Part shown: one piece after another, positions 40,164 to 64,000 of the stretch | Numbering within the stretch: the first letter of the stretch is position 1 | Layout: each line of letters starts with the position of its first letter | Source of the DNA: Octopus sinensis | Taxonomy: Eukaryota | Direction of reading: 5' to 3' | Length of the DNA: 64,000 bases | NCBI RefSeq assembly: GCF_006345805.1 | Contig: NC_043001.1 | Span: forward strand, 25,606,001-25,670,000 | The notes under the pieces: generated by a model | What the model was told of the DNA's origin: nothing | Seen by the model: the letters and a program-made list of their open reading frames with translations, nothing else | The model's database searches: none | Translations under genes and position numbers: made by a program

Positions 40164-40190
40164 ATGGCTGGTAAAAAGAATAAGGAAAAG
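40164..40190 (+). CDS. NCL: Nucleolin exon 1 (MAGKKNKEK)
   Basis: ATG followed by |gtatg donor; short K-rich first exon downstream of TATA-like element. Confidence 0.8.
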
Positions 40191-41708
40191 GTATGTTATT
40201 TTATTATTTTTCTATTTTATTCGAGGATAATATCTTTTGAAGATAGAATAAGCTGGTTAAAATTGAAATATACAACTTGAAAGCTAGCCAATTGTGGAGA
40301 GTCCACGTGTTCAAGCACATGTAATAAGAGACGAGATTATTTCGAAATATTTCGCCAACAGCAAGTTAATCATTTCGAATTAACAAAAAATAATCACTAT
40401 AATATCAAGTAAATGGTCCTACGAAATGAATTTTGCAGTTTTAGTTGTAAAATTATTTGATTAGCTGTGGAAGTTATTAAAAATATTAAAACCTATTCCA
40501 TGTGGTTTGTGACCTTATTAAAGACGAACGCAAAGTGATTATTTAATCAAGTGCTGTTTATTTAATTTATTAAATTCTGTCTCCACTTTTTGGACTGAGC
40601 TTCGGAATAATTACCTTCTTGCTCAAAACAGCTTATGTTTTCGTAGAATCGTAATCTGTATTTAAACATCCAGAAATTTTCGGAAGAAGTCATGGAAAAA
40701 AAAAAAAAATCTACTTGTGTTTTCCAAAATGGAGAAAGAAGCGAAGTTAATTTTTGCAGAATCGGAATGCCCTATATTTAAATGTTTAAAAATTAAATTG
40801 AAAGTAACTGCTTGTTGTAAATCTTAAAGAGTACTATCAATATCTCCGTATTTATAGCCTATTTGAATTTATTAAAAAGCTAAAAGAATTTGAAAAATAT
40901 TTTGTATAAAGATCGGTGAAAGAGTGATAATATGGGACAAAGCGACGTAATTAAAATTGGTTACTGGTAATTAGGGGAATGTAAAAAAAAAAAATTGGCT
41001 TTTCTCAAAATCAGTAAATTCTTAATCAAGTAATGATATCTCCGTATTTATAGCCTATTTGAATTTATTAAAGACCTAAAAGAATTTGAAAAATATTTTG
41101 TATAATCTAGAGATCGGTAAAAGAGTGATAATATGGGACAAAGCGACGTAATTAAAATTGGTTACTGGTAATTAGGGGAATGTAAAAAAAATAAAAAATT
41201 TGGCTTTTCTCAAAATCAGTAAATTCTTAATCAATTGGATTTTCTAAGATATATTTTTGTTGAAAAGGCGTCGCTGCCATTGCTGTTTTTCTACGATTCT
41301 AATTTGTGTCATGGCTGGGGCGTCCACGTGGGTGAGCTATGCCGAGTGGAATGTTGCGCTAGTGTTCAAGGAGAGCCTCCTGCTTGACTGATTTCACATA
41401 TACATTGCGGCGGTTATCGATACAAAAGGCGATTCAGACAAAAATACTTTATTTTTGTGTTGTAGTGAATTAAGAATTACAACATATCTTTTCTCATCGA
41501 TTGTTACAATATGTTTGTGTGTGAAATCGACAACAGTAATTTTTACTCGTAGAGGTCAAGCTGTGAAACGAATAAACAGTTGAAGCGAAGATACTTCGTG
41601 GTTTCGAGTTCAGTACTACTACTCACTAGTATGGGCAAGGGCAATTGTCTGTTGTGGTCTCTGGTCAGTTGTTGTCATGTGAGCGAATTTGGTACGCAAA
41701 AGACCGAC

Positions 41709-41753
<45 letters not shown>

Positions 41754-44700: not shown

Positions 44701-47700
44701 GGATGCAGCAACTACAACACAAATACTGAGATTCTTGAAGTTAAACACGGTTTCACAAGTCTCCAATCTTTTTTGCTGCTTAGTTTGTGAGATTCAGTTA
44801 TATCACACCTGTGCACTGGGTGTGATGCAATTGCTGTTATTGCCTTCTTTGATAACTTTTTGAGAAATAAAATATTTTGGTTGTCTTTTTTTATGTGTAT
44901 TTATTGTGTTGAGCAAAATAGTTACATGGCCCATACTTGTTATTCCCTCTTATCTGGCACCCTGTGTATAAAGTTTGGTGATCCTGCACTAGTCAAGTGA
45001 AAATGTAAAACATTGCCTAATTTATATTATGATGGAAATACATTCTCCTTTTTTGAAACAAGATTTGAAATATTTCTTCTGATAAACTGATTGCAATTCT
45101 ATGTAAAAAAAATCTAGTTGCCAAAGGTACCAGCTAAAGTTTGAGAAAGTGAAATGGCTGTTAGGTTCAACAAGTTAATGCCTAAATAGGTTTGATAATA
45201 AACAGTTAGGTTGTGATTGGTATAATGCAAGAAGCATTAAGAATCAAATTTTTAGCACTTTGGCAAATCTAAGCACTATATATATATGTATATATAGATG
45301 TGTGTATGGTGAGATTGAAGATAAATGACAAAATAACTTGTGTCCTTTATGCTTTATCTTAGGAAAATTTTATATATTGAATATATTCAAAAATTGCTTA
45401 ATGCTTCTAGTATTTTACAGTCTCAACAAATGTTATATATCTTGTAGAACCTCTTTTATGTACTATTTCAAATTATGTTTAAAATAAAAAATTTTTACTT
45501 CTGGACATTTAATAAATTTTGAATAGGACACTTATTTCTTACTCTTTTTTTCTAAAACATGGATTTTCAAGAGCCTTAAGATGTGGCTACAAAATTAGAC
45601 ATACCTTAAATATAACTGACCATAGCGTCTTGATGTCTTTCTAGTTGTATTGTTTCCTTGATGTGCTAAACTATAAGAACATTCTACATGGATTAAATTA
45701 TATAAATTGCATAACTACCTGGATATTTTTATTTTTTAATGTAAAACAATTACAATTTATCAATGTGACAGTTCATGTTATGACTGCAAATTCAAAATAC
45801 AGTGACATTGCCTTAATTTAATTTTAAAGATAAAGAATAATTTCATTATTAAACTAATATTTGGGACATTTAACATGAAATGGGAAGTTTGTGTCACAAC
45901 TAGGGTTATTCTCAGGCAGGTTTATATTAAAAGGGTTAAATTTTTAGGAAAAGCAATTGTAAACAAAATTATATTTTCCAAGGTTTGATCCAGTAGAGGC
46001 TCTTTTCTAGCTTTATATAAAGTATACAATTTAATGTTGTCTGTGTTGGCAGTCAGTTTATCCTGAGTTCTGAAAGTTCCCAAAATTTACCCAGTTGCTG
46101 TATATGCTCTACTTCTGTGTTGGTATCTTTTTCAATTAATAATGTTTCTTTGTTTTAGGCTGCCAAAAAGACTGCACCTCCAAAGCCTGTAGAACCTGAA
46201 GAATCTTCAGAGGAGTCCTCTGCAGAATCAGAAGAAATGGAAGTTGTGAGTACCTTTTTTTTTTTAAAAAAAAAACTATCATAGATAAGATTCAGTGTGC
46301 TTAAGTGCAAATAAATCCTTGAATTAAATTTTGCATTTTTATTTTAAAATAATTTGGCAACACTTACTTTTCTCCTTAGTCATTTGCCATTTTTGAATGA
46401 TAACCATAACTTATTCAATCACCTTCTGATCATCTTACATTGTCACCACCACCACCAGCAATTGTTTACTTCACCCACTTTGTTGCCACTGTCCACCTGC
46501 GAGAATTTGTACTTCTGTTCCTACCTGTGATGAGTTCTGCTAAAGTTCCTTCCAACTTTTTGTACATAACATCTGTACAAACTCTGTAGATCTGTCTTAT
46601 GGTAGCTCTAAATTTAACTCTTGACAGGTTGTATAGGTTGGTGGCTTGGTCATAATTTGAGACCTGCAAAAAGTTGTTTTCTTGCAGTTAGTGGATTGTT
46701 GCACATGGACATGTTTACATGTGATTAAGAAGCTAGTTTCCTGACCATGTAGTTTTTGATTCAGTCCAACTACTTGGCACGTTTAGTACTTGTCTTCTAT
46801 TATAGCCCTGGGTTAAGTACTTTGAGTGGATGATGGAATATGGTGAAAGCTGGTCATTCATGTATGTGGGTGCTCTTGTCATTGCTGGTTTGAACAAGTA
46901 TTGTTGGTTTTCAGTCTTTGATGTTTTGCTATGGAAAAATATTACCTTGCTTAGTAATTCAATCTGATCCATGAATAAATCAAAAGGTGTATGCTGAAAC
47001 AAGTTTTTCTTATAGGAATAATTTTTTTTTATTTTTAGGAAACTCCAGTTGTTACAAAGAAGCAGTCAAAGGACAAAGGTGCAGCTGGTAAGATTTAATT
47101 TATATATTTATTATACTTGGTGTATAGACAAAATTTTTATTGGGCTTATGTTAAGGAATCAATTCACTCACTACTCTGGTCTATCCTGGCAATAAAGCAT
47201 TCAAAGACTGCTGTGTTTGAAGATGTTTTGAGTTTCCTGTTTCGTTTTTTTTTGTTTTTTTTTTTATTGAAAAATGCTAAATATCAGAAATATGTGAAGT
47301 GCTGTGCATTACTTTCGATATTTTGAGTTTGTAATAGATGCCAGAAGTTTCAGATTAATCCTGCGTTGTCCTGTGGCTGAGATTTCAGTGATGTGATTAC
47401 TTATTTTCAGAATGACATTGGTAAAAGTGAGATGCTGGATATCGCCAGTTTGAACATAAAACAAGTAGGCTATTAGGGTTGGGTATGGCCAGTTTAAATG
47501 CTAAAGGATTAAATATCTGTATTGGACTTGTACAAATTCATGAAATTTTAAATAGCTATAATCTATTTATATCTGCTTTATTTTTGTAATGTTTTTGTTT
47601 TGTACAATAGCAAAGAAAAAGAAGGAAGAATCTAGTGACAGTGAAGAAGAGGAGGAAGAAGAAGAAAGTAGTGAGGAAGAAGAAAGTGAGGATGAGGAAG

Positions 47701-50700
47701 AAGAAGAGGTAGTAGAAGTTAAAAAGAAAAAAGATAAAAAAGGAAAAGATGAAAAGGTTAAAGAGAAAGTTAAAGAAGAGAAAGTAAAAGAGGAAAAGAA
47801 GGTAAAAAAAGAGGAGGCTAAAAAGGCTGCTGAATCAGATGATTCTGAAGAGGATTCTGATGAAGAATCTGAAGAAGAATCAGAAGAGGATTCTGACGAA
47901 GAAGAGTCTAGTGAAGGTATTACAAATCCTAAAATATATCTTGAATAATTTCTGCTTTGAAATGTTTTCTGATATTGACTAAAAACCTCTTTTACATTAT
48001 AGAATCAGAAGAGTCCCCTAAGCCAAAGCTGAATGGAAAAGCTGATGGTAAGTAATTTCTTCCTCATTTACCATTTTATTGCTGTTCAATGTAATCAATG
48101 CGGTTCATGTTTCCCATATTTATGTATATAATTAAGAATTTAATATTGGTTTTATAAACGGCTATAACTTTGTTTGGGAGCCATTATGCCACTAATAGCA
48201 TACACTGGCATGTGTTATCATTATTTATGTAACCAGCTTCCCAAAACAGGATTTGTTTCCACTCACAATCTGGTAAGCCAAAGACAAAAACTTTTTTTTT
48301 TGTTAATGCTCGGCCGCATGGAGGTAATGACAAGTCGCTGACTGAGACCTTTGGTGATATGCTGTCAAGCCAAGTGAAATCATAGTCGTGACCATTGCCA
48401 CTGGTGCGTAAGAAGCACCCATTACACTCTTAGTGATTGGCATTACGAAGGGCATCCTGCTGTAGAAAGCATGCAGCCCTCTGGTTTACCAGTTCCATGC
48501 CAGTGTGTAGTTTAATTTTTTAATGGAAAGCAGCAATGTACACTTTTTATTTGTGAGGTAGTTAGAAATAGAAACTTAATTACATTGATTATATCTGTCA
48601 TCTTTTTGTCTTCAACAGGTTCAAAAGAAGCTAAGAAGCGTAAGACAGAGTCAGAAGATGGTAACGATGCCAAGAAAGCTAAAGTTGATGGTGGTAAGAA
48701 GATATGCTTTAGTTTGTGTGCATGTTCCAGTTTTGTGGTTAGAAGCTCTGCAGCTTCTATCAGGACACTTTCATATCTTGATGTGATAATGGTGTGGCTC
48801 TTTATGAGCATACCTCGTTTCATTTATTATCCTGACAAAGTTACTTAAGGAAAAGCATGAATGTGTTGAAGCTTGCTTCTTACCTACATGGTTCTGGGTT
48901 CAATCCTGTTGTGGGGCACTTTGGGCAATACTCCTTGTGAATGGAAACTGAAACCCTGTTGTCTCTATCTCTCACTCTCTCTGTATGTATGTGCGCCTTT
49001 GTCTGTTTCTTCCCCCCCCCCCACCTCAGTTACTGCACAACAAGTGTTTGTTCCTGTACCTTAACAGTTCAGCAAAAGGGGCCAATAGAATAAGTGCTAG
49101 CCTTTACAAAATGAGATCTGGGGTTTATTGGATTAAATTACTTAATGGGCTTTTAATGTCACATCCCAAACCAGTTGATCCAGTGAGCAATTGTGATCAT
49201 TCCATTCCTGCTTCGAATCTCTTCTTAAACATGTTTCATCCATATCACTTGGTGAAGAATCTTACAGATTTATGTCCGGTATCAAACTGCATATAGGAGA
49301 TAAATATATTGCTCACATTATCATCTCCAAGATCTCTTTTATTAATGCTTTTGCATTTAGATGATCGCCAAGTATGTTTATTAGGACCATTTTGAATTAA
49401 TCATGTGGCTTTGAGATTTAGGTAGAATATTTTGGCCAGTGTTTTCTAAATTAAGACTAAGCATTGCTTCTTGCTTGGAAAATTGCTTTGTCAGTGATCC
49501 AGGACAAGGTGGAAGATGCGTTACCCTGTGGTACAGGAGTTCAAATTGGTAGAGATACTAAATTTGATGAATGACAAGTTACCACTGACAATATTGTTGG
49601 TTATTGTGAAAGATTATTGAATTTTTCAATTCTTCCTTTTCAGAGCCTGTAACAGTTATGTGCAGAAATCTTCCTCAGGAAGTGACTGCTGAGACCTTTG
49701 AGAAATTTCTTAAGAAGAAAGGAATTGAATACACATCTGTTCGCAAGCGTGATGACAGAGCGTATGTATTACAATTGCTTCTTAGCTATTTTACATTTTA
49801 TAGGCTTTTTGTTATGTATATTCACTTTGTGTTGTTTTATATTCACTCCTTTATATTGTTTTTTTTATAGATTTGCCCACATTGACTTGGCTAATCCAGA
49901 TGATCTTGATAAAGTTTTAGCAATGCAGAATATTGACTATAAAGGGAATGCACTGACATTTGAAAAAGGTCGGCCCATGAGAGCAAAGGGAGAAAGAAAC
50001 ACTGGTATGTTGATTTTGTTTGTACAATAAAAACTCGAGGAAAATAACCATAGAAGTAATGTCCCGTTGGTACATTGAACAATACACATTTTGTGCACTT
50101 TTTTTCCCAGGTGATGATTCAAACACGCTATTTCTGAAAAATCTACCCTATGATGACTCCGAAGATACTATTAGAAGCAAACTGATGGAGATATTTCCTG
50201 CAGCACAAAGTATCAGAATTCCCTATAAAGGAGATTCACATAAGGGGTAAGATTTAAATGTCTTAGATTTGCAGTGTGCCATTTATATAATCATTTGTGA
50301 TAGTTTTCTTAGATTTACTTTTTTTTTCTTTGAATCAATTACTGCAGGATTTTATTTTACTTGCTTTTATTTACCTGGTGTTTAACAAACTTTGAATCGT
50401 GAGTCGCTGTTTCTGTGTATAGTTGGTGTGTATTTCATTTTGTAGATTTTTAGTTTTTAAAGACAAATCTCTTTAACCCTTTCGTTACCAAGCCGCCCGA
50501 AAAAAATTTTGGTTAATGTGACCTGTTCATATTTAAATGAGAATATCAGAGCAAATCTCTTTAGTACATTCGTGAAAATACGTGATTATACTTCGTAAAC
50601 AGTTCATCTACAGTTTTGTACGATCGACATGTAATTTTAATTCAACTTTGAAAATGGATAGGAGTTTCATGTTATCAAGCATTGATTTCGAATTGGAAAA

Positions 50701-53264
50701 TTTGTGAAGTAAATACTGGGTACTGTTGTGGGTTTAGTTTTTATACAGGGAGACTAATGTTAGCATGGCTTAGAGTATGATGTGGTCTAGAAGTTATTGT
50801 TTGAAGCGATCAATGCGGAAACAAACTTGCGCAGAATGTAAACAAACACAAAATGGGGGTTCAAATTTCGGAAAATTTGTGGAGCAAATACTGGGTACTG
50901 CGTGGATTTAGTTTTTATACAGGGAAAATAATGTTAGTCAGCATGGCCTAGGGAACGATGTCTGGAATTTATCACTTCCATACCATAACCAGGGCTGTAT
51001 ATTAATTTTTGACCGATTTCTTTAGTTCGGTCAAACTTGCGGTGGATTCCAGTATTTCACTTTATTCCACCTGGTGCACCAGTTGTGCAAATTCAACTGA
51101 TGATATAGTGATGTGCACAATTCTTCTTTATCAAAATTTTGTTGCATACCCATTTGAATATTAGCTGATGATTCATTTTCTATGGTGATGTTTAAACAAA
51201 ATTTTAGTATTTTTACCTTTTGCTCAATTTACCTGGATTTACCTGTAATTAAAGTCATTTTGAGACAAAAGTTATGAAATAGAATTAAGAACCCTTTCTT
51301 TAATTATGTTCCAAATATCACATTAATATGTTGATAAGTAAAAGGGTTAGTTATTTAACCCTTTAGTGTTCAGATTACTCTGTTAAATGTAATACTTTTT
51401 CACTCATTGTTTTGAATTAATCGTGCATTACCTCATAGCTTTGAGGTTTCAATGATGTGATTGTATAGTTTTTGAATGTCAATGTAGGTTAGGTTTGAGG
51501 GGCTAGATACTCCCAGTTAGATTATAAAACATAGAATATTTGGGCCAGGTATGGCCAGTTTAAACACTAAAGGGTTAATGAAACCAGCCTAGATTCATGA
51601 TTATTTTAGAATTTAATTGAAACTCATGAGGTGTATTTTGGTCAGAATTATAGTAACGAAAGTGTTAATGCTAATAACTCATTTTCTATGCTGCTGCTTA
51701 ATAATTTATCTCTAATGAGATTTGCCTGGTGTCAAATTGAGGAACAGATTTTTTAAATTCACTTTAATTCACTTATGATAAATAAAGAAGTTGTTTTTAT
51801 TAATCCACTCTAATGTGTATTTGTTTTGTTTTCAGCTTTGCATATATTGAGTTTGAGAGTTCCGATAGTGTAAAGGATGCAGTCGAAAACAAACAGGGTA
51901 TTGAGGTTGGAGACCGACAACTGTACTTGGATTATGCAGGCAGTTCTAGTAGATCTGATTCACAACCAAGAGGAAGAGGAGGCTACAGAGATGGTAATTT
52001 TTTTGAGATAATCATTTCAATTGTAATGAAATAACATTACATTGGTGTGTTTATTAAGTTTTTGCCTATTTTTATTCAAGATGAACCAGAAGAATCCAGT
52101 GTACTTTTAGTAAGAAATCTGTCCTATGATTCAACAGAAAGCTCATTAAGGTCATATTTCAAGGATGCTACTGATGTACGATTACCAACACATCCAGATT
52201 CTGGAAAGCCAAAAGGGTGTGTAATGACAACTTGTTCACTTTTTGCATTGTGTTGTATTGAATTTGATAGATTTTATTGCATGTGTTCTTAGCTGTTTTT
52301 AAAAATGGAACTTTTTTTTTTTGTTTTAGAATTGCCTTCATAGAATTTGAGTCTATTCCAAAAGCAAAGAGTGCTCTGAATAAAATGGATGGTAGTAATG
52401 TTGATGGCAGGTCTGTTCGGTGCTGTTATGCAAGAAGCAGAAGTGATGGTGATGGAAGAAGTGGAGGTACAGTAACTTTTCCTTCTGTTACTGAAGACAG
52501 GTGTGGTTGGGGTTAGCTTAAGAGCTTAGGCAGTAGACTTATTGGAAATATTTTAGAAAAGTAGATCGTGATGTATTGAGTGGCATTGACTTTTTTTTCT
52601 TGTTTGCTAAATCAGATTGTAGTGGTCTACAATTTCTTATAGTAACTTCGTTATCTCTAGCTATTTTGTTGACTATTGACCAGTTAGCATTTAATAAAGC
52701 CATATTTGGGCCAAAATATTGTACTTGTTTTGTGTGCAAACCTGTCAGATTCAACCTCTGGTACCTCGTGCTCTGATGTCATTCTGAAACTTACCAATTA
52801 CATCAGAATCTTAAAAGCTAGGAAGTATGACCCGATTCGTTCATAGTAAGCATTGCATTTAACAATATGCTGAATGCTAAAGAGTTAATGGTTGATTTTG
52901 TAAGTTCTTGGTCAGCGATTTTTCTTGACAATTTTTATACAAAACAATAAATTTCCTTTCCAGGTTTTGGTGGAAGGCGTGGAGGAGGTTTTGGTGGTGG
53001 ACGTGGAGGAGGTTATGGTGGCGGCCGTGGACGTGGAGGGTTTGGTGGTGGACGTGGTCGTGGTGGAGGTTATGGTGGCGGCCGTGGAGGTGGAGGTTAC
53101 GGTGGTGGACGAAGCAGTTTTGGTGGTATGTATAGCATTTTCTATTTTGTGTTTTTAAATTTCAAGTTTAAAATGGAATATTCATTTTTGCTGTTGTCTA
53201 AACGTTTTTTTTTTATTCTTCTCCAGGAACAGGAAGGAAAAAGACTTTCAGTGATAGCGATTGA
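40164..53264 (+). CDS. NCL: Nucleolin-like protein, complete spliced CDS (acidic/basic N-terminus, 3 RRMs, RGG/GAR tail)
   Basis: 14 exons: 40164-40190, 46159-46245, 47039-47087, 47611-47916, 48003-48047, 48619-48693, 49644-49761, 49871-50004, 50111-50246, 51836-51993, 52081-52216, 52330-52466, 52964-53125, 53227-53264. All introns are GT-AG with matching phases. RNP1 motifs AFAHIDL, KGFAYIEF, KGIAFIEF; C-terminus GTGRKKTFSDSD*. Confidence 0.93.
40841..41234. repeat. ~197-bp tandem duplication in nucleolin intron 1
   Basis: tatctccgtatttatagcc...aaattcttaatcaa present twice (40841-41030, 41038-41234). Confidence 0.88.
42221..42575 (-). mobile_element. tRNA-derived SINE (family 1)
   Basis: Colinear with 817-1232. 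Confidence 0.8.
44483..44986 (+). mobile_element. Non-autonomous hAT (Charlie/SPIN-like) element
   Basis: TIRs aaggggtcaccaaact / agtttggtgatcctg; 8-bp TSD ctctagtc/cactagtc; internal remnant of hAT C-terminus (FGTSY..., RLTDEHLKAF). Confidence 0.75.
46159..46245 (+). CDS. NCL: Nucleolin exon 2 (AAKKTAPPKPVEPEESSEESSAESEEMEV)
   Basis: ttttag| acceptor, |gtgag donor. Confidence 0.88.
47039..47087 (+). CDS. NCL: Nucleolin exon 3
   Basis: ttttag| acceptor, |gtaag donor; ETPVVTKKQSKDKGAA. Confidence 0.85.
47611..47916 (+). CDS. NCL: Nucleolin exon 4 (acidic/serine and lysine-rich tracts)
   Basis: ORF 47589-47948 with E/D/S and K blocks; splice sites in phase 1. Confidence 0.92.
48003..48047 (+). 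CDS. NCL: Nucleolin exon 5
   Basis: tatag| acceptor, |gtaag donor; ESEESPKPKLNGKAD. Confidence 0.85.
48619..48693 (+). CDS. NCL: Nucleolin exon 6 (bipartite NLS-like KKRK...KKAK)
   Basis: caacag| acceptor, |gtaag donor. Confidence 0.9.
49644..49761 (+). CDS. NCL: Nucleolin exon 7 (RRM1 N-half)
   Basis: VTVMCRNLP RNP2-like motif; splice sites. Confidence 0.92.
49871..50004 (+). CDS. NCL: Nucleolin exon 8 (RRM1 C-half)
   Basis: FAHIDL RNP1-like motif; splice sites. Confidence 0.92.
50111..50246 (+). CDS. NCL: Nucleolin exon 9 (RRM2 N-half)
   Basis: TLFLKNLPY; splice sites. Confidence 0.93.
50477..51664 (+). mobile_element. piggyBac-like non-autonomous element (TTAA-flanked) carrying a nested MITE
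   Basis: ttaa-ccctttcgttacc ... gtaacgaaagtg-ttaa; homologous to 54328-55304. Confidence 0.7.
51359..51574. mobile_element. TTAA-targeting MITE
   Basis: Perfect 12-bp TIR ccctttagtgtt/aacactaaaggg with TTAA TSD; the empty site is visible in the sister element near 55220. Confidence 0.8.
51836..51993 (+). CDS. NCL: Nucleolin exon 10 (RRM2 C-half)
   Basis: GFAYIEF...GRQ-type LYLDYAG; splice sites. Confidence 0.93.
52081..52216 (+). CDS. NCL: Nucleolin exon 11 (RRM3 N-half)
   Basis: VLLVRNLSYDSTE; splice sites. Confidence 0.93.
52330..52466 (+). CDS. NCL: Nucleolin exon 12 (RRM3 C-half)
   Basis: GIAFIEF...DGRSVRCCYA; splice sites. Confidence 0.93.
52964..53125 (+). CDS. NCL: Nucleolin exon 13 (GAR/RGG domain, ~54 aa)
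   Basis: FGGRRGGGFGGGRGGGYGGGRGRGG...; splice sites. Confidence 0.93.
53227..53264 (+). CDS. NCL: Nucleolin terminal coding exon (GTGRKKTFSDSD*)
   Basis: ctccag| acceptor, phase 1, TGA stop; resembles nucleolin C-terminal KKTxF motif. Confidence 0.9.
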
Positions 53265-54327
53265 TGAGATTTAGCAGTTTGGACAATAAAGCTGTGCCTT
53301 CCATTCTCAATGGATAATAGCTGATCATGCCACTTTGTTTTATATTCAAACACATTCAATGACTGCAGATAAAATCACTGTAATTCCAGTTTTAATATTT
53401 GTGGTCTTCCTTGTACATAGCCATAACTTTTTAAGCCACTGATGTATGCTGACTTACTGCCATTAAAGTTATAAAAATATTTGTCTTGTTTGTCAATTAC
53501 TTTCAAGTATCTTCCAATAATTGTTGATATCTGACTACAGACAGTTTTGCATTGTTTTTGGAACTGATTGCTTTCCTTCAGGTAGTTCTGTTATTCATTT
53601 TACAGTGAAGGTTATTGCTCTGGTTTTGATTTCAGCCTGTTAGCAGAAGTCTGTTGGGTTGCCACAGAATGCTTTTTTTAGTTCGTAGACTTTGTGTTAT
53701 TAAGAAAACTGCCTCTTATTTGAGATCCGAGTGGGGTTATGTGTTATTAAATTGCTTAGATTTTCACTTGGGAAAACATGTTCAGCTTAGTAACTGGTCA
53801 ATGGATATCTCTGGATCCTGTCTTACGAATAAAAATGATTTCACATTGTTGCTACTACATGTTGCATCAGTATTATAGATGTTTAAGACTGAAAGTTTTC
53901 GTTATCTTAAATATACATTTGACATAAAGGGGGGAGGTGAGAAGGTTACCAGGGTCATTAATCTTTAATAAGAGTTCTTAGAACCAATTGTTTTAGTTGT
54001 TCTTCCATTGCTATACAGGTAAACAAATCTTTGGTACATAAGGACTTGGGAGAACTTTAACCATGGGCAAATTACTCCATAGCAATAGGCTTTGTGCTGG
54101 CATTGGGAATAGGTCCTTTCAGTAGTAGATATCCTGGCAAGCTGGATAGCTTGCTAGTAACCGTCTTTCAAATGCTTAGACTAGAAAAAGTGACTTTACA
54201 GAGAGGACCATTTCTCCAACAGTTGAATGCATTCCCACTTAGAATTTAAATGCTTCATTCATCTTAGGGAGGAACTTACTCCAAGACATTGTCTCATAAA
54301 AGGTTCGGTATCTACAGTATTCCTTAA

Positions 54328-55304
54328 CCCTTTCGTTACCAAGCTGCCCGAAAAAATTTTGATTAATGTGACCAAACCTGCCCGTATTTACCTATTCATA
54401 TTTAAATGAGAATATCGGCAAATCTCTTTGGTGCATTCGTGAAAACAAGTGATTATATTTCATAAACAGTTCATCTACAGTTTTGTACAACGATCGAAGT
54501 GTAATTTTAATTCTGTGGATTTTGGGGGATTTTTTTCCGAAATTTGTTCCTATTGTTTTCAAAATTTGTAATTCTGACAAAAGATGGATATGAATTTCAT
54601 TATATCAAGCAGCGAGTCAGAATTCGAAGGACTTTCTACTGAAGACCTTGTTAAATCTGTCTACGACTGAAAAAAAAAAAGCATGTGGTATTTGATAGTG
54701 AATCTGATGTTTCATTTTCCAAAGTGAAAACTGAATCTGACAGCGATAGAGAAATGAATTGGCACCTGGATGGAGTGAAATTTTAAAACCTGTTTTTTTC
54801 TGAAGAAACTGGACCAAACCACAGACTTTCCCAGGAGAGTAAAGCCTTAGACTATTTCTTTTTACTTTTTCGAATGAGCCTATTTAAAATCATTACGGCG
54901 GAAACGAACCGTTACGCTGAATGTAAACAAAGCAAAAGAATGGATAGTTAGTGGTTTCCCACGACCTTAAATGAAATAAATATGGGTATCAGAAAGTTAC
55001 CCAGAATAACAAATTCTATAGTAAAATTTTGTTGTATACCCAATTGAATATTAGCTAATAACCCATTTTCTATAGCGATGTTTGAACAAAATTTTAATAA
55101 TTTTATATTTTGTTGAATCTACCTGCAATTAGTCGCTTTGTGACAAAAATTATAGTATAGAATATTTCATTAAATTATCTTCCAAAAATCAGATTAATAT
55201 ATTGATAAATAAAAAAGTTATAGTTGTTTAATGAAACCAGACTAAATTTAGAAATTAATTGAAACACATGAGGGGTGTATTTTGGTCAGAAATATAGTAA
55301 AGGG
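54328..55304 (+). mobile_element. piggyBac-like non-autonomous element
   Basis: ttaa-ccctttcgttacc ... gtaaaggg-ttaa; shares long blocks with 50477-51664. Confidence 0.7.
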
Positions 55305-56849
55305 TTAATAGGACCTGGTTTCAGGTCACAGTTCACTATGTACAAGCTATTCTGTTTGTACTGGCTCAGACATACTGTGGATAACCATTATTTACTTCCT
55401 GACTACGTTGATTTGGGTTCAGTATCTAGAAATTTGTGGGTTTGGTTGACAAGCCTGTTATGTATCTGAGTAAACTTGCATTCTCCCCATCATCTGCTTG
55501 CTGGTTACAAACAGTGGCCTTGCTATTTATGCAGATGGTGTCATTCTGTTCTACCACAAAAGTGCAACTACATTATCATTGTTTAACATCTTGCCATGCT
55601 AGCATGGGTTGGACGATTGGACTGGCGAACCAGATGGCTGCACCAGGCTCAAATCTGGCAGTTTCTACAGCTGGATGTCCTTCCTAATGGCAACCACTGG
55701 CACGAGGGCCAGTCAGGCGGTGCTGGTAACAGCCATGCTCAATTGGCACAGGCAATGACACCTCAGTTGAATGTTTTTTCAAGTGCCAGTAGAGCAACGC
55801 TAGTAACAGTCATGCTCGAATGGTACTTTTTACATGCCGCTGGCATGGAAGCCGGCTGCTCTGGCATCGAACACACTTTTGGATGGTGCTCATAGCGCTC
55901 CACTAGCACGGATACCAGTCATCAAATACTGCGCTGTCTTAGGCAAGTTTCCTTCGACTGATACAATTTTCTACATAGCCATGTTTTTGCTGTTTTGATA
56001 GATTGGCATCTGGTGGTTGAAAAAGTGCCAGCATATTTTCATGATCTGTACCCTCATGGAAGAGTAGACATTAAAGTTATGATTTGCTGCCAATGGATTG
56101 ATACAACTGCTTAGTTAGGATATGGTCTACAGTGATCATGGACAGTTCCACTAGTATGATTTGGTTGTACCTTTTCTCTGACATTCGTAGCTAGAGGTAT
56201 TTTCTTCACTTTTCGGCTCGCATTTAAAATGAAAGGATTTTACATGCCTGGATGTCCACATGTATAGACGTGGACTCACTTATACACACTTATAAATTGA
56301 GCATTCCACCCTTAGAAGGATGCTGTTTGTCCTAGGTCTGTTCATGTGCACTGAACTGTTTTCAGATTATATGGCTTTTAGAAGTAGCACTGAAATAGAA
56401 GCCCTTTTATTTTTGCACCAGCCAAGTGAAAGAGAATTTTTGTTTTTGTACAAAGTACCAAATGGCATAGTTTATGGGGAATCCTTTTGTCCTCATTATC
56501 ATGAAAGTCTATTTTCTACACTAGTGACCCTAACGTGGTGTGGCAGCAAGTAACACCTTAATATTTTAAGTTTTACCGTTAGATAGCATTGAATTCAAAA
56601 TATTTTCTCCCAGCGGAGCTTTTTTTCTTCTAACTACTATAATGTTCCCCTGACATTATATGGCAGTTGTAGAACTACAGTGGCACTGTTATTACAAATG
56701 CTAAAGACAACTCAGCCACTGCTATGCAATATTTACAACAGTTGTTTACATCCTGAAAATCCTTATTTGTACACAGATTTTTTTTTTTTTTTTGCCATTT
56801 AAATAAATTCTTTGAATACTCTCTGAAAAGCTGCTGGTTGTGGAATCTG

Positions 56850-58850
56850 CCTTATGTGGTCTATCAGAAGGACCAGCTATCCAATTTGATAAGGCAATGA
56901 AGACTGGGGAAGGACCACTGCCTTTCAGAATTCATCACAGATGCTTAGGATATGTGGCAGTGATTATATGGCCTAGCCACCTGTACAGTTAATCATATCC
57001 ATATCCAATGACTAGCAGTATTTATAGTCAATTGCTACAAATGTAAAAGTGATGCCCAAGTTAATTTTAGAGGTGCCAATACAAACTGAGAGACTAGGCT
57101 GTTATAGTTCGACTTAAAGCCTTGATGAGATGCAATTTGGTTTTGTATCCAGGGAGAAGCACCTGATGCTATCATCCTGGTAAAGCAGCTGCAGAAATAT
57201 TTAGCCAAGAATAAACCTGAACTTGGCTTTTGACATGGAGGAAAGCCTTTGACACAAATTCCCTGCTCCCTCATCTGGTGGTCAATGCAGAAGCAAGGGA
57301 TGAGTGGTTGGTGAGAGCTGTTCGGGTAATGCTGTCAGTAAGTTGGTGGTTGGCAATGAATTCAGTGTACGGGTAGTTTACTAAGAATCAATTCTTATCC
57401 CCTTCTTGTTCATCAAAGTCCTCCAAGAGATAACAGTCTGCCCATGGGAGCTCTTGTTCTTACAGCTAAGACACTATTCTAAAGTAGAGGAAATTTCAGG
57501 TTTGGAATCTAAAGACCTTAGAGTTAACTTAGCAAAGACAAGTAGGAAACACAATTCCCATAAGGTAGATAGCCCTGCTTGATATGGAGGAAAGGTGTTG
57601 GCAGAAATTCCAAATGATGTAGCCAGTGCAAGCTATGCGTGCTTTAGTATCACAAGAAGTAGTCTTTGTGTATGGCAGATGTGCAGGTACAGTAAAAAAA
57701 CTAAGAATCACCAATATCAGAAGGAACCCTTAGAAGTACTAGATGGCTTCTGTTACCTTGAGTATTAGCATTAAAGTAGGTATTCTGAAAGTATAGTTGC
57801 TAGTATGAGAACAAGCTGGGCAAAAGGCCTCCTTCAGAGTGAAAAGCAGATTGTATAATGCCTGTATACATTACAACAATGCTACATGGATTACGACCAC
57901 AGAGGATCTGCAAAGGTTTGAGAGAAATGAAGCCACTTACATTACCTGTTCAGTTCCAGTTTAACCCACTCTCATTACTGTATTTATTTTGAGATGCTCT
58001 GTGTTTCTTTCAATTACTCTAAATATAACAAAGAATTTAGTAAAATAACTTCGTTATCATTAAGCTGGTGTTAGGAACATAAATTGTGACTAAGATTTGG
58101 TGGAAGATTTTAATTCAAAACTTATGAAAACAAGACATTTGTACTACAGAGCCAGGGCCGGTTTCAGCCGGGTTGGTAATGAAAGGGTTAAGGCAGCGAG
58201 CTGGTAGAAACGTTAGCATGCCGGGCAAAATATTTCGTCTGCCGTTACGTTGTGAGTTGAACTTTGCCTTTCATCCTTTCAGGGTCGATAAATTAAGTAC
58301 CAGTTATGCACTGGGGTCGATGTAATCGACTTAATACCTATGTCTGTCCCCTCTGTGTTTACCCCCTTGTGGGTAATAAAGAAATAGGTAGTGTAAGTGT
58401 GCACGTACAACAGAGTAGATGAGAAAAGTAGCATTCAGGAGAGAAAATTGCTGGTATGTATGGATGAGGACAGCTACATTAAGAAGTGTCCAACTTTAAT
58501 TGTGGAGAGAATGTATGGAAGGGGTAGAAACATGGAATGAAGTGGTGAGAAAGGATCCTTAGACATTCTGCCTCACTGGGGAGATGACAAGAGACTGAGA
58601 CTCCTGGCAATTTGCTGTGCTTGAGGAAGAGTGTCAAACTAAGTAAAACTTTGGCTTTCCATACACATAGGTATGTCCTTTACAGCTATGCCCCTCTCTC
58701 AGTCAATGCTGTAAAGTGGTCGATGTTTAGCTGTAGAAACCATGCCAAAACTGATAATTGGGGCTTGGTGTATCTCTCTGGCTTGTCAGCTCCTGTTATA
58801 CCGTCTGACCCAGGGCAGGTTGGAAATGGACGTTAAATGATGATGTTAAA
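56850..58850 (+). mobile_element. Highly degraded RTE ORF2 region interrupted by a MITE and a SINE
   Basis: RT remnants MQFGF, DAIILVKQLQ, EKAFD-like, LIWWSMQ; 3' UTR tail near 58700-58845. Confidence 0.65.
57965..58187. mobile_element. TTAA-flanked MITE inside an old RTE
   Basis: ttaa-ccc ... ggtaatgaaaggg-ttaa. Confidence 0.55.
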
Positions 58851-59860
58851 AATAAATATCTATTTTCTAACACTGAGATTTACATTTTCACAAATTTTTG
58901 ATCGAAATGAGAGCTCTGGAACATAGTCCCTAAAGTAATCCACATTCTATTGAAGTCTTTGAAAGTTTTTCTCTAATGGTCTTAATTCTAACTTAAAAGT
59001 GTAAATCTTATCTTTATTTAAACCTGCTTTACAAAGACTATTAAAATAACAGGCACATCAATAAACCACCAACTTCAAAATTAACATCAGCAACATTCTT
59101 ATAATCACTTTTTCCTGCGTGCAAAATAGTCCTGTCACAACAGTGTCTGCTGAGCAAGTCGTCCTCAAAGTTTTACAAACCCCATCTTCCATTCATTACA
59201 AATCCTTTTAAAACTTTAAAAAATGCATGATAGCACTTCCAATCACATGGTTTTGAATTCAGGTCCACAGCATCGCACCTTCAGCAAATGTCTTGAGCTT
59301 GGGATGACCAAAGCCTTCCAAGTGGATTTGGTTACAGAAACTGAAACTGTTGTGTGAATGTGTGTATATTGTCTTGACATTATGTGGGAGGCATGCACCA
59401 TCTGTTGGTATATTTCTGAGGCCTTTTGCGCAACCTGCACAGCAGAGTCCAGTCAGTCCCCGTACTCTTGAAATACCTTACCTGTCATGACCATACGGCT
59501 GACCAACACAAGTTATCAACCCAGCTGGACCTTCCATGAAGAGAACACAATAAGCAGGATAACCTTGTAAATAAGTGTCTGTCATTCATCTCCAATATTC
59601 TGCACATACATGTCTGGCAATGGGAAAATGTTGCCTGGCTTGAAAACAGGTGAAGGTTGACAACAGGAAGGACATCCAGCTGTAGAAAAGCTGCAAGCAT
59701 GGAAAAGTGGACAATAATGTTTAAATTTCCAGTCATATACAACCAGGTGAAGAAGACAAACATTTAGTATCCACTTCTGTGAGTAAATCAATATTTTTCA
59801 CTCTTAAGAATCACAGTATTCAACTTTTCTATCATTGTCATCATGATATTAAATATTTTC

Positions 59861-59980
59861 ACTTACGGCCATATCACGTTGAAAGCACCGGTTCTCGTCC
59901 GATCACCTAAGTTAAGCAACATTGAGCCTAATTAGTACTTAGATGGGTGATTGCTTGAGAAACCTAGGTGCTGTAAGCGT
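59861..59980 (+). pseudogene. Orphan full-length 5S rRNA copy, probably a pseudogene
   Basis: 120 nt acttacggccatatcacgttgaaagcaccggttctcgtccgatcac...ggtgctgtaagcgt matches the 5S consensus. It has several transitions in the internal control region and no oligo-T terminator. Confidence 0.88.
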
Positions 59981-59994
59981 CACGCAATCTATAG

Positions 59995-60350
59995 GTGCAG
60001 GAGTGGATGTGTGGTAAATAGCTTGCTTACCAACCACATGGTTCTGGGTGCAGTCCCACTGCGTGGCACCTTGGGGAAGTGTCTTCTACTATAGCCTCGG
60101 GCCGACCAAAGCCTTGTGAGTGGATTTGGTAGACGGAAACTGTAAGAAGCCCGTCGTATATATGTGTGTTTGTCCCCCCAACATCGCTTGACATCTGATA
60201 CGGGTGTGTTTATGTCCCTGTAACTTAGTGGTTCGGCAAAAGAGACCAATAGAATAAGTACAAAGAAGAAGTCCTGGGGTCAATTTGCTCGACTAAAGGA
60301 GGTGCTCCAGCATGGCTGCAGTCAAATGAGGGAAACAAATAACGAGTAAA
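59995..60350 (+). mobile_element. tRNA-derived SINE (family 1), directly after the 5S copy
   Basis: Full head, body and tail. Confidence 0.82.
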
Positions 60351-60556
60351 AACACTTTATATTATATTGTTGACCAACTGACAACTCATACATTTGTTCC
60401 TTTTATGACATTTATTTAACCTGTTAGCATTCAGATTACTTTGTCAAATGTTGACATTGTTTTGAATTAATCAAGCATTATCTTGTAGGTGTGATTGCTT
60501 ATTTTTAGAATGACACTAAGGAGTAGGCATGACGGCTGGATTTGATCAGTTTGTTT

Positions 60557-61036
60557 ACAAGACAGGTAGAGTATCTGGTCATCAAATCTAAGTAGAGACG
60601 TCAAACTTGAAATCTTCAAAGCCACAGTCGAACCAATTCTACTATATGGCTCAGAAACCTGGACGTTATCAAAGAAGCTTGAGAGGCGGTTGGATGGAAC
60701 CTACACTCGCCTCCTTATGAGAGCTCAAAATCTCCCGTGGAAGCGCCATCCAACCAAAATGCAAATATATGGGAAACTACCACCTGTGTCATCTCTTGTG
60801 AAAGGTAGGAGAGTCCAGTTTGCTGGACATTGTTGTAGAGCTGAAAAAGAGGTAATTTCTACTCTCCTCTGGAAGCCATCTACTCGCAAGGCCAGAGGGC
60901 ACACACACTCTCCTACCCTGATGTAATCTCCAGGGAAACAGGCATCCAGCAACAGGACCTCCGTAATGCTATGATGGACCGTGAAGTCTGGCGTAGCATG
61001 GTAAATTCCATTGTCTCGACCACGGTTGAACAATGT
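60557..61036 (+). mobile_element. 3' fragment of a second RTE-clade LINE family
   Basis: KLEIFKATVEPILLYGSETWTLSKKLERRLDGTYTRLL...RRVQFAGH...DREVWR, with (GAT)n tail. Confidence 0.85.
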
Positions 61037-61318
61037 TGATGATGATGGGTTGGACAGTTTGACAGGGACCAACAAGCCAGAAGGTTGTGCCAAGCTCCAA
61101 CAAAATTTTTGGCATGGTTTTCTACAGCTAGATGCTTTTCTTAATACAAACTGCTTTACAGAGGGTACTGAGTGCTTTTTGCACAAATCCTTGTGAAAAT
61201 ATTACAACCCATGATCTGCAGGACCAAACAATGATGATGATGATTTGGGCTGGATATGGCCAGTTTAAATATAAGCATTTTAGAACAAGTAATCTCAGCT
61301 GAAAGGTTAATAAAGATT

Positions 61319-62685
61319 TGTTAAAGACATGTAGAAACTCTATGAGATGCACCAAGTGTAAGCTATGGACACATAAGAGATGCAGCAATGTCAAAGGAAG
61401 GCTAACTAGGAAGATGGTTTTTGTATGTGGCAGATGCTCAGGAACAATAAACACTGAAAATGCTCTGAGACCAACTTCCGTCACTTTCCAGGGAGAAAAA
61501 CTAGAAATAGTTGATAGTTTCCGTTACCTAGGTGACCAAGTCAGCAGCGGGGGCGGGTGTGCTGAAAGTGTAACTGCTAGAGTAAGAATAGCTTGGGCAA
61601 AGTTCAGAGAGCTCTTACCTCTGCTGGTGACAAAAGGCCTCTCGCACAGAGTGAAAGGCAGACTGTATGATGCGTGTGTACGAACAGCCATGCTACATGG
61701 CAGTGAAACATGGGCCGTGACTGCTGAGGATATGCGTAAGCTCGCTAGAAATGAAGCCAGTATGCTCCGATGGATGTGTAATGCCGGTACTCACACTCGG
61801 CAGAGTGTAAGTACCTTGAGAGAAAAGCTGGACCTAAGAAGCATCAGTTGTGGTGTGCAAGAGAGACGTTTGCGCTGGTATGGTCATGTGGCGAGAATGG
61901 ATGAAGATAGTTGTGTGAAAAAGTGCCACACCCTAGCGGTTGAGGGAACCTGTGGAAGAGGCAGACCCAGGAAAACCTGGGACGAGGTGGTGAAGCACAA
62001 CCTTCGAACTTTAGGTCTCACTGAGGAAATGACTAGAGACCGAGACCTCTGGAAGTGTGCTGTGCGCGAGAAGACCCGGCAGGACAAGTGAGTCCACAAC
62101 CCGTGGCCTTCTACATGGGATGGAGCCAGCCTACGTATGCATACCTTCCCTTCTTGGGACACAAAACTCTACTTGTGAAGACGTGTTGAGGCAAGTGAGG
62201 ATCAGAATCGAAATCGATCAATGGAAATTGCGGATGTGCTACCAGTGCCGGTGGCATGTCGAAACTCTGCCTGTGAAGACCCATTGAGGCAAGTGAGGAT
62301 CAGAATCGAAATCGATCAATGGAAATTGCAGATGTGTTACAGTGCCAGTGGCATGTAAGAGAACTTTCTGTTTCGCGACCGTTGCCAGCACCGCCCCGTT
62401 TCGTGTCCGTTGCCAGCCTCGCGTGGCCCTCGTGCCGGTGGCACATAAAAAGCACCATCCGTTCGTGGCCGTTTGCCAGCTCTGTCTGGCACCAGTGCGG
62501 GTGGCACGTAAAAAGCACCCACTACACTCACGGAGTGGTTGGCGTTAGGAAGGGCATCCAGCCGTAGAAACACTGCCAGATTTGACTGGGCCTGATGAAG
62601 CCTTCTGGCTTCCCAGACCCCAGTAGAACCGTCCAACCCATGCTAGCATGGAAAACGGACGCTAAATGATGATGATGATGATGAT
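61319..62685 (+). mobile_element. 5'-truncated RTE (BovB-like) LINE, young copy
   Basis: Intact ORF C-terminus ([28 protein letters not shown]), ~600-bp 3' UTR, (GAT)n tail, TSD gttaataaagatt at 61306-61318 and 62686-62698. Confidence 0.93.
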
Positions 62686-62984
62686 GTTAATAAAGATTAG
62701 TTAGTAACTGCAGAAATTATTTACAGACAACACAATAAGTGAATATTTTGATGTTTTTTAATCAGAGTAAGTGTTTACATACAATATCAGTAGTGCAAAA
62801 ATTCATGGCTATATACAAGTGAAACCACATATGTAAAGAACTGAATAAAAGTGACTTTTCTGCAGTCACTGGATGTGGATGTGGTTGTGATTGAATGTAA
62901 AAAAAAAAAAAAATCAAGACGATATCACCATCTAACACCCAATAACAACGGAAGCCACAGCTGTCTCATCCAAGATGTTAAATC

Positions 62985-63025
62985 TCATCTGTCGCTATCA
63001 CTATAAGTCCTTTTCTTACCCGTTC
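62985..63025 (-). CDS. NCL: Second nucleolin-like paralogue, terminal coding exon (GTGKKRTYSDSDR*)
   Basis: tttaaag| acceptor; peptide nearly identical to GTGRKKTFSDSD* of the first gene; proximal 3' UTR also similar (tgagattta..agctgtg.cttcc). Confidence 0.88.
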
Positions 63026-63168
63026 CTTTAAAAAAAACAAAACATGAAACAAAAATAAAATTGTTTTGACAATATTGCAATTAGGAAATAAATACTCAAT
63101 TATCTATCTCAAACTTCAAACTAAAATGCAAAACGAAAAAAAAAAAAAAAAAAAAATGGTTTATATAC

Positions 63169-63534
63169 CAATACTGTTTCGTCCGCCACTATAACCTCTG
63201 TTTCGACCATAGCTGCTGCCGTAACCACCACCACCACTGCCGTAGCTTCCGCCGCCACCATAACCACCACCACCACCACCGTAGCCTCCACCGCTACTGT
63301 AGCCTCCACCACTACGTCTACTGCCATAGCCACCTCCGCCATAGCCACCACCACCACCACCGTAGCCACCACCACCACCATAGCCACCGCTACCATAACC
63401 ACCACTTCGGCCACCATAACCACCACTGCGACCTCCATAACCGCCGCCGCCGCCGCCACCACCACCGTAGCCACCGCCACCATAACCTCCACTGCGTCCA
63501 CCATAACCGCCACTGCGTCTTCCACCAGCATAAC
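63169..63534 (-). CDS. NCL: Second nucleolin-like paralogue, penultimate exon (Gly/Tyr-rich GAR-like tail, ~122 aa)
   Basis: Minus strand: ttgcag| acceptor, frame GYAGGRRSGGYGGRSGGYGGGGY..., |gtatat donor; phase 1-1 as in exon 13 of the first gene. Confidence 0.85.
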
Positions 63535-64000
63535 CTGCAAATAAAGTTAAAAATTCAGAAAACCATAGCTGTTGACTTTCATGAACAGGATTTCATCATA
63601 CTTATATTGGAACTAATAAAAACAAAAAATGAATTAGCCATCAACATTTCCCTGTGTAGACCCGACACCATAAATGACAACTTTATACTTAGACACCTAA
63701 ACTTATAAAGGTCTAATTATTTAAATATAATTTTAGTAATATGCAATATAGCCGAAAAGCTGCAGAAAAAATCCCGATAGACAATATTGCATTATACTGA
63801 ACACTTTGCCTATCACGTGTGTTACTGGTGATTCCCACAGTACAGAATTGATATAATATTTATTCTGTACTGCGGGAGTCACCAGTGACACTCCTGCTAT
63901 ACATCAATGTGGTAAGTTTATATAATGAACTGGAACATATACATATTACGGAGATGTACTTGCATAGCAAGTGATTTGATCTGAGATCGTGAGCTGGAAC

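What the first reader, a model, noticed from the sequence alone, without database searches (positions are those of the whole stretch)
52964..63534. Tail-to-tail nucleolin duplication with an RGG-to-GY switch in the disordered tail
Seen: the minus-strand exons at 63534-63169 and 63025-62985 have the same phases, almost the same terminal peptide (GTGKKRTYSDSDR vs GTGRKKTFSDSD) and a similar proximal 3' UTR as the plus-strand nucleolin ~10 kb away. The paralogue's low-complexity exon is ~122 aa vs ~54 aa and is dominated by GGYG/SGGY repeats with few Arg, unlike the FGG/RGG tail of copy 1. Known: most animals are described with one nucleolin, and Tyr/Arg content tunes condensate behaviour of such tails. 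Inference: a lineage-specific duplicate that may have different phase-separation or localisation properties. The ORF track translates this exon in the wrong frame.
Basis: partly seen in the sequence, partly recalled or inferred. Interest (0 to 1): 0.72.

Follow-up and report, generated by a model that had tools for sequence, protein, structure and literature searches.

The report
Third octopus nucleolin with tyrosine-rich tail
The window ends with the last two exons of a third octopus nucleolin gene, in which the usual arginine-glycine tail is replaced by a long glycine-tyrosine-serine tail; the gene is real, old and already in public gene models, and its function is untested.

Summary
The window is Octopus sinensis CM016863.1:25606001-25670000.

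**What is there**
- The + strand carries a complete 14-exon nucleolin gene ("A", 40164-53264).
- The - strand carries a 122-codon Gly/Tyr exon (63534-63169) and a 13-codon terminal exon (63025-62985). Intron phases match A, and the end peptide is nearly the same.
- These two exons close an annotated 601-aa CDS ("C"). Its first exons (MAARKNK / NPKKSAEAEESNEESFSEPEEMDA) are also nucleolin-type.

- This is a three-gene cluster, A(+) C(-) B(+), not a pair.
- The same order and orientations occur in Argonauta hians. O. vulgaris and O. bimaculoides also have C head-to-head with B.
- C is sister to B, not to A (192/200 bootstraps).
- All octopod copies group apart from the cuttlefish nucleolin (200/200). 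The expansion is therefore octopod-wide and old.

**The tail switch is real and conserved**
- C has 0 RGG motifs and 19 Tyr, in both Octopus and Argonauta.
- Arginine is not scarce; it sits in RS rather than RGG context.

**Main gap**
The RRM exons of O. sinensis C lie in 12.2 kb that I could not read. Three RRMs are shown only for the Argonauta orthologue. Expression and function were not tested.

Interest is moderate to low.

The parts
40164..53264 (+). Nucleolin paralogue A: a complete CDS of 14 exons and 534 aa. It has an acidic/basic N-terminus, 3 RRMs, a GAR tail and a terminal peptide.
   Evidence: Exons: 40164-40190, 46159-46245, 47039-47087, 47611-47916, 48003-48047, 48619-48690, 49644-49761, 49871-50004, 50111-50246, 51836-51993, 52081-52216, 52330-52466, 52964-53125, 53227-53264. 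All have GT-AG introns and the frame is open throughout. The region is 100% identical to NCBI 'nucleolin [Octopus sinensis]' P0001 from the internal Met onward. The N-terminal exons match O. vulgaris P0321. Pfam finds 3 RRM_1 domains.
52964..53125 (+). GAR (RGG/FGG) exon of A, 54 codons, phase 1 at both ends.
   Evidence: The tail has 5 RGG motifs, 5 Phe and 3 Tyr.
53227..53264 (+). Terminal exon of A, encoding (G)TGRKKTFSDSD followed by the stop codon.
53265..53500 (+). Short 3' UTR of A, with ATTAAA at 53462-53467. It is alignable with the UTRs of B and C.
63169..63534 (-). Gly/Tyr/Ser-rich exon of paralogue C, 122 codons, phase 1 at both ends. It has no RGG motif and is built from 21-, 39- and 87-nt tandem units.
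   Evidence: Sequence and splice sites. Tandem units. Composition. The orthologous Argonauta exon (L001 27650-28023) has the same acceptor context and phase. Across the aligned codons of the GY and terminal exons together, 62 are identical, 40 differ synonymously only and 21 differ non-synonymously.
63026..63168 (-). Last intron of C, 143 nt.
   Evidence: Donor G|gtatat and acceptor aaag|GA.
62985..63025 (-). Terminal exon of C, encoding (G)TGKKRTYSDSDR followed by the stop codon. This is the 3' end of the called 601-aa CDS.
   Evidence: The called gene ends at L002 position 23328, which is window position 62985.
62745..62984 (-). Short 3' UTR of C, with ATTAAA at 62762-62757. It is conserved with Argonauta C (64% identity) and with Octopus B (63%).
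63535..64000 (-). Intron upstream of the GY exon. It runs off the window, and the RRM exons of C lie beyond it.
   Evidence: tblastn with P0008 finds no exon here. The gene continues to L003 position 5090, which is record coordinate 25687297.

Best explanation
The minus-strand exons are the 3' end of an intact third nucleolin paralogue, 'C'. It belongs to an octopod-specific cluster arranged A(+) C(-) B(+).

**Origin.** The cluster most likely arose by two successive inverted local duplications, after octopods split from cuttlefish and squid and before Argonauta split from Octopus. The ancestor first gave A and a B/C precursor. The precursor then gave B and C.

**What C keeps.** It keeps the nucleolin body plan:
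- an acidic, Ser-rich N-terminus;
- three nucleolin-type RRMs (shown in Argonauta, inferred for O. sinensis);
- the mollusc-wide basic/acidic end peptide;
- a short 3' UTR with ATTAAA.

**What C changed.** The glycine-arginine-rich (GAR) exon was remodelled by tandem duplication of about 7-aa units into a tail roughly twice as long. That tail is made of GGYGG and (R)RSGGY repeats and has no RGG box and no Phe.

**Inferred mechanism (not shown).**
- C still binds RNA through its RRMs.
- Its tail has lost the canonical sites for PRMT1-type arginine methylation.
- It has also lost the RGG-mediated contacts with RNA and ribosomal proteins.
- It has gained Tyr 'stickers' and RS dipeptides of the kind found in hnRNP A1, FUS or CIRBP-type tails.
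- Its self-association, partitioning or regulation should therefore differ from A and B.
For: **Shown**
- Exon anatomy and phases.
- The window is O. sinensis chromosome CM016863.1. The - strand gene has a 601-aa product running from window 62985 to L003 position 5090.
- Its start exons, MAARKNK and NPKKSAEAEESNEESFSEPEEMDA, have intact splice sites. They are identical in O. vulgaris and differ at a single synonymous base in O. bimaculoides.
- The same gene is called head-to-head with B in O. vulgaris (602 aa) and O. bimaculoides (580 aa).
- In Argonauta locus L001 the order is B(-), then C(+, 552 aa), then A(-). This gives the same relative orientations.
- Argonauta C has 3 RRM_1 domains. Its best solved-structure relatives are nucleolin, at E 9e-42, against 2e-9 for hnRNP A1.
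- In the tree, octopod copies group apart from cuttlefish NCL in 200/200 bootstraps, and B+C group in 192/200.
- A C-type RRM1, with its intron and splice sites, is present in a genomic contig from another octopod run. It groups with Argonauta C in 291/300 bootstraps.
- Tail composition is conserved: 0 RGG and 19 Tyr in both species.
- Between Octopus and Argonauta the tail has 40 synonymous-only against 21 non-synonymous codon differences, and 19 TAY codons remain unbroken.
- The tail has tandem-repeat structure.
- ATTAAA and the roughly 230-nt UTR are conserved.

**Own knowledge**
- Nucleolin GAR domains are PRMT1 substrates.
- Tyr and Arg counts set the phase behaviour of FUS-family tails (Wang et al. 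2018, Cell).
Against: - The RRM exons of O. sinensis C lie in 12.2 kb that I could not read (record coordinates 25670001-25682207).
- The 601-, 602- and 580-aa products have no Pfam hit on record. Neither RRM-based search returned them. Octopus models that lack RRMs are therefore not formally excluded.
- I obtained no transcript evidence. No Logan transcript-derived C protein appeared.
- Low-complexity tails change quickly. The A tail differs by 21 aa between O. sinensis and O. vulgaris, so part of the difference could be neutral.
- Alignment inside the repeats is ambiguous, so the synonymous/non-synonymous counts are rough.
- The tree is neighbour-joining on 246 columns, with one decapodiform outgroup.
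Confidence: 0.72

Rival explanations
1. C is a functional nucleolin copy, but the tail difference has no biophysical meaning. In this reading the copies are kept for dosage or for tissue- or stage-specific expression, and the GY composition is drift by replication slippage in a tolerant low-complexity region.
For: Repeat numbers change fast. The A tail is 21 aa shorter in O. vulgaris than in O. sinensis. TRF finds a recent 87-nt internal duplication in the C exon, 87% matching. Aromatic residues also vary among mollusc nucleolin tails; Mercenaria, for example, has Trp.
Against: The RGG-free, Tyr-rich, Phe-free composition is shared by Octopus and Argonauta C but not by A or B.
Confidence: 0.2
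2. In O. sinensis, C is a decaying or truncated copy (a pseudogene, or a model without RRMs), and only its two ends still look like nucleolin.
For: The called products have no Pfam hit on record and are absent from the homology searches. The middle of the gene was not read.
Against: A 601-aa CDS is called whose two ends I verified. Its length fits an N-terminus, 3 RRMs and a 135-aa tail. All four visible exons have intact splice sites and frames. Nineteen TAY codons remain unbroken. The poly(A) signal is conserved. Models of similar length exist in three Octopus species.
Confidence: 0.06
3. The region is an assembly artefact (a collapsed or duplicated haplotype), or the GY exon belongs to an unrelated glycine-rich gene.
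For: None found.
Against: A and C are only about 65% identical in the RRM region of the orthologues, and their tails differ completely. The arrangement recurs in four independently assembled genomes. The CDS that contains the GY exon starts with nucleolin exons.
Confidence: 0.02

Closest known systems
Animal nucleolin (NCL); mollusc nucleolin as in Acanthosepion pharaonis NCL and Mytilus nucleolin
   Same: Common descent: nucleolin is the best relative in the protein and PDB searches. C shares the acidic Ser-rich N-terminus, tandem RRMs and a Gly-rich C-terminal low-complexity exon. It also shares the terminal basic/acidic peptide (KKKTFSDSD-type) seen in cuttlefish, Mytilus and Sinanodonta.
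   Different: Octopod copies have three RRMs rather than the four of vertebrates. The C tail has no RGG/FGG boxes, is about twice as long as the A tail, and is Tyr- and Ser-rich. The C N-terminus in Argonauta has about half the Lys+Arg content of A.
Arabidopsis NUC1/NUC2, a duplicated nucleolin pair
   Same: A duplicated nucleolin retained over the long term. The two plant nucleolin genes are studied with separate mutants (PMC7607443). The antagonistic roles reported for NUC2 are from my own knowledge (Durut et al. 2014).
   Different: The duplication is independent and in plants, with 2 RRMs, and both copies keep a GAR domain. Nothing here shows antagonism in octopus.
hnRNP A1/A2, FUS-family and CIRBP/GRP-type glycine-rich RNA-binding proteins
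   Same: RRMs followed by a Gly/Tyr/Ser-rich low-complexity tail. GGYGGRSGG-type units also occur in small glycine-rich RRM proteins retrieved here (P0229, P0303).
   Different: The C RRMs are nucleolin-type (E 9e-42 against about 2e-9 for hnRNP A1), and C has the nucleolin N-terminus and end peptide. The resemblance lies in tail composition only and reflects convergence, not membership.

Membership tests
Nucleolin family (NCL / Nsr1 / gar2 type) | Descent: closest relatives are nucleolins, and position is syntenic with other nucleolin copies | tested here: met
   The A-C-B cluster is conserved in Argonauta.
Nucleolin family (NCL / Nsr1 / gar2 type) | N-terminal acidic, Ser-rich stretches | tested here: met
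   O. sinensis C exons 1-2 encode MAARKNK and NPKKSAEAEESNEESFSEPEEMDA. The Argonauta C N-terminus is 149 aa with 51 D+E and 21 Ser. The rest of the O. sinensis N-terminus was not read.
Nucleolin family (NCL / Nsr1 / gar2 type) | Central tandem RRMs (O. sinensis C itself) | not testable with these tools
   The exons lie beyond position 64000, in a 12.2-kb stretch that no tool could fetch. The 601-aa product was never retrieved.
Nucleolin family (NCL / Nsr1 / gar2 type) | Central tandem RRMs (orthologue of C) | tested here: met
   Argonauta P0008 has 3 RRM_1 domains, and its top PDB hits are nucleolin. A C-type RRM1 is present in a second octopod, on contig L006.
Nucleolin family (NCL / Nsr1 / gar2 type) | C-terminal GAR domain (RGG repeats interspersed with Phe) | tested here: not met
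   The C tail has 0 RGG, 1 RG and 0 Phe in 135 aa. Argonauta C has 0 RGG. Copy A meets this feature with 5 RGG and 5 Phe.
hnRNP A/B or FUS-like prion-like RNA-binding proteins | Gly/Tyr/Ser-rich low-complexity tail | tested here: met
   57% Gly, 14% Tyr, 13% Ser and 13 GYG motifs.
hnRNP A/B or FUS-like prion-like RNA-binding proteins | RRMs and overall architecture of that family | tested here: not met
   Nucleolin scores far better than hnRNP A1, and C has the nucleolin N-terminus and end peptide.

The most novel reading that the evidence does not exclude
Octopods keep three nucleolins on nearly the same RRM scaffold, with graded tails: A is RGG/Phe, B is mixed, and C is Tyr/Ser with RS in place of RGG. 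In the most novel reading, C is an expressed protein whose unmethylatable, Tyr-rich tail sends it to a different nucleolar sub-phase or RNA granule than A and B. That would be a natural test of 'sticker' grammar in a ribosome-biogenesis factor, in a group noted for unusual RNA biology.
Probability: 0.3. Interest if true: 0.55.

Novelty: new variant of a known kind. Interest (0 to 1): 0.35.

Why it matters
Nucleolin is a core nucleolar protein, and its GAR/RGG tail is regarded as a defining domain. Here a paralogue has kept the RRM scaffold while replacing that tail with a Tyr-rich one that lacks RGG. It has been retained since before the Argonauta/Octopus split.

This offers a natural comparison of how tail chemistry affects methylation, RNA binding and condensate partitioning. 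It also corrects the picture for octopods, which have three clustered nucleolins rather than one.

The practical value is modest. The genes are already in public annotations, and divergence of low-complexity tails between paralogues is common.

Tried and rejected
**Searches that found nothing**
1. A homology search with the C tail alone gave no hit at E<=0.001. Low-complexity bias is the likely cause. This used the last of three searches, so the 601-aa product was never retrieved.
2. Exact look-ups of P0005, P0007, P0002, P0121 and P0004 were not on record. As a result I could not inspect the neighbours of the cuttlefish gene or the O. bimaculoides A-C interval.
3. A look-up of the wrong-frame ORF over the GY exon, meant to fish a longer Logan contig, was not on record.
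4. The 50%-representative search returned P0008 itself for the C group, plus a 125-aa genomic ORF (P0243). The species of its run, SRR11869391, could not be identified.
5. A literature search for octopus nucleolin paralogues found nothing relevant.

**Ideas tested and dropped**
- A conserved RNA structure in the shared 3' UTR. RNAalifold gave a weak fold (-6.8 kcal/mol) with an unfavourable covariation term and only one compensated pair. The conservation is at sequence level and ends just after ATTAAA.
- snoRNAs in the nucleolin introns, as occur in vertebrate NCL. There were no Rfam hits at gathering score.
- The haplotype-collapse and unrelated-gene readings, both rejected on synteny.
Full report
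**Where the window comes from**

The plus-strand gene is 100% identical to NCBI 'nucleolin [Octopus sinensis]' (P0001). From the offsets of locus L002, the window is CM016863.1:25606001-25670000.

**Checking the observation**

On the minus strand the sequence reads ...tttgcag|GTTATGCTGGTGGAAGACGC... from 63534 to ...AACAGTATTG|gtatat at 63169.
- This is 366 nt, or 122 codons, entered and left in phase 1.
- A 143-nt intron follows, and then aaag|GAACGGGTAAGAAAAGGACTTATAGTGATAGCGACAGATGA, ending at 62985.
- Joined, the two exons read GYAGGRRSGGYGGRSGGYGG...GRNSIGTGKKRTYSDSDR*.

The plus-strand copy has a 54-codon exon (52964-53125) and a terminal exon (53227-53264). Both have the same phases, and together they read GFGGRRGGGFGGGRGGGYGG...RSSFGGTGRKKTFSDSD*.

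The mechanical ORF list does give the GY exon in a different frame (63121..63540).

**What the minus-strand exons belong to**

A gene with a 601-aa product is called on the minus strand. Its CDS ends at window position 62985 and starts at L003 position 5090, 18.3 kb away.
- I verified the start. Exon 1 is atggctgctagaaagaataag|gtatgt (MAARKNK).
- Exon 2 encodes NPKKSAEAEESNEESFSEPEEMDA. Both exons have canonical splice sites and are homologous to the first two exons of the other nucleolins.
- Both exons are identical in O. vulgaris; O. bimaculoides differs at a single synonymous base in exon 2.
- Both ends of the annotated CDS are therefore nucleolin-type.
- O. vulgaris (602 aa) and O. bimaculoides (580 aa) have the same gene.

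In all three Octopus species this gene lies head-to-head with a further nucleolin gene, which I call B (P0178, P0176, P0180). The locus is therefore a three-gene cluster: A(+) in the window, C(-) straddling the window end, and B(+) beyond it.

**The orthologue in Argonauta**

In Argonauta hians the same three genes lie on one contig, with B(-), C(+) and A(-). C is again tail-to-tail with A and head-to-head with B. Argonauta C (P0008, 552 aa) has:
- an acidic N-terminus;
- three Pfam RRM_1 domains;
- nucleolin as its best relative among solved structures, at E 9e-42, against about 2e-9 for hnRNP A1;
- a 140-aa tail, GYGGRRSGGYGGRSGGYGG...GAGKKRTYSDSD.

Its GY exon has the same acceptor context and the same phases as the window's exon.

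**History of the cluster**

I built a neighbour-joining tree on 246 gap-free columns of the RRM region.
- All octopod copies group together, apart from the cuttlefish NCL, in 200 of 200 bootstraps.
- B and C group together in 192 of 200.

C is therefore the sister of B, not of the tail-to-tail neighbour A. Three further points agree with this:
- The C 3' UTR is closer to B (63%) than to A (53.5%).
- The start of the B tail (GRSSGGYSGRHSGGGYGG) resembles the start of the C tail.
- The alternating orientations fit two successive inverted local duplications.

Both duplications occurred before Argonauta and Octopus diverged. From my own knowledge that split is on the order of 100 million years old or more; I did not test this.

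**The tail**

Tail composition by copy:

| Copy | Length | Tyr | Phe | Arg | RGG | GYG |
|---|---|---|---|---|---|---|
| O. sinensis C | 135 aa | 19 | 0 | 12 | 0 | 13 |
| Argonauta C | 140 aa | 19 | 1 | 14 | 0 | 18 |
| O. sinensis A | 66 aa | 3 | 5 | 10 | 5 | 3 |

- Cuttlefish and Mytilus tails are also RGG/Phe type.
- The arginines of C are mostly followed by Ser (RRS, GRS).
- The exon is built from 21-, 39- and 87-nt tandem units.
- Between Octopus and Argonauta, aligned tail codons show 62 identical, 40 synonymous-only and 21 non-synonymous differences.
- All 19 TAY codons, each one step from a stop codon, are intact.

The switch is therefore real, old and maintained. By contrast, repeat number is labile: the A tail is 21 aa shorter in O. 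vulgaris.

**What could not be shown**

The RRM exons of O. sinensis C lie in record coordinates 25670001-25682207, between the window and L003. No tool could fetch that stretch.
- The 601-aa protein was never retrieved.
- It carries no Pfam hit on record.
- It did not appear in the RRM-based searches. I cannot explain that absence.

There is some indirect support. A 920-nt genomic Logan contig from another octopod run carries C-type RRM1 exons with intron and splice sites. These exons group with Argonauta C in 291 of 300 bootstraps.

I obtained no expression data. The conserved ATTAAA and short UTR are compatible with a working 3' end but do not prove one.

**How it most likely works**

*Shown:*
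- C is a nucleolin-descended gene.
- Its RNA-binding scaffold is conserved, as seen in the orthologue.
- Its tail is conserved and lacks RGG.

*Inferred from general knowledge of GAR/RGG and Tyr-rich tails:*
- loss of the canonical arginine-methylation sites;
- loss of RGG-mediated contacts;
- gain of Tyr-driven self-association;
- possible control through RS or Tyr phosphorylation.

Partitioning or regulation would then differ from A and B. The main rival reading is that the tail difference is functionally neutral and that the copies differ only in expression.

**Verdict**

This is a new variant of a known family rather than a new kind of thing. The gene models already exist publicly, and no paper on them was found. 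Interest is moderate to low.

Noticed in passing
window 59861-59979 (+): A full-length 5S rRNA match (Rfam RF00001, 96 bits, model positions 1-120) lies in the spacer between the two nucleolin genes. It could be a dispersed 5S gene or a pseudogene.
   Followed up: partly
window 40164-49643 (+): The public O. sinensis model for copy A (P0001, 334 aa) starts at an internal Met. The window in fact encodes a complete 534-aa, 14-exon CDS. The N-terminal exons (including the small exon 47039-47087) match the O. vulgaris protein P0321.
   Followed up: yes
window 53265-53500 (+) and 62745-62984 (-); L003 26007-26245; L001 29140-29375: The short 3' UTR of about 230 nt, including ATTAAA, is conserved among paralogues A, B and C even though they are old. 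Conservation stops just after the poly(A) signal. No conserved RNA structure was found.
   Followed up: partly
window 59991-60342 and at least 10 other sites (e.g. 834-1225, 42228-42584, 25437-25766): A tRNA-derived SINE family is scattered through the window and through the introns of the nucleolin genes, at 70-85% identity.
   Followed up: partly
window 61318-62091 (+), 60725-61186 (-), 62164-62519: The A-C spacer contains a long ORF (257 aa) that looks like part of a transposable element but has no Pfam hit. It also contains 98- and 63-nt tandem repeats.
   Followed up: partly
terminal exons: window 53227-53264 (+), 63025-62985 (-): The end peptide, a basic patch followed by (T/S)(F/Y)SDSD with CK2-like sites, also occurs in cuttlefish, Mytilus and Sinanodonta nucleolins. 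It looks like a mollusc-wide C-terminal motif of unknown role.
   Followed up: partly
window 52964-53125 (+): The GAR tail of copy A is 21 aa longer in O. sinensis than in its close relative O. vulgaris, so repeat number changes quickly.
   Followed up: no
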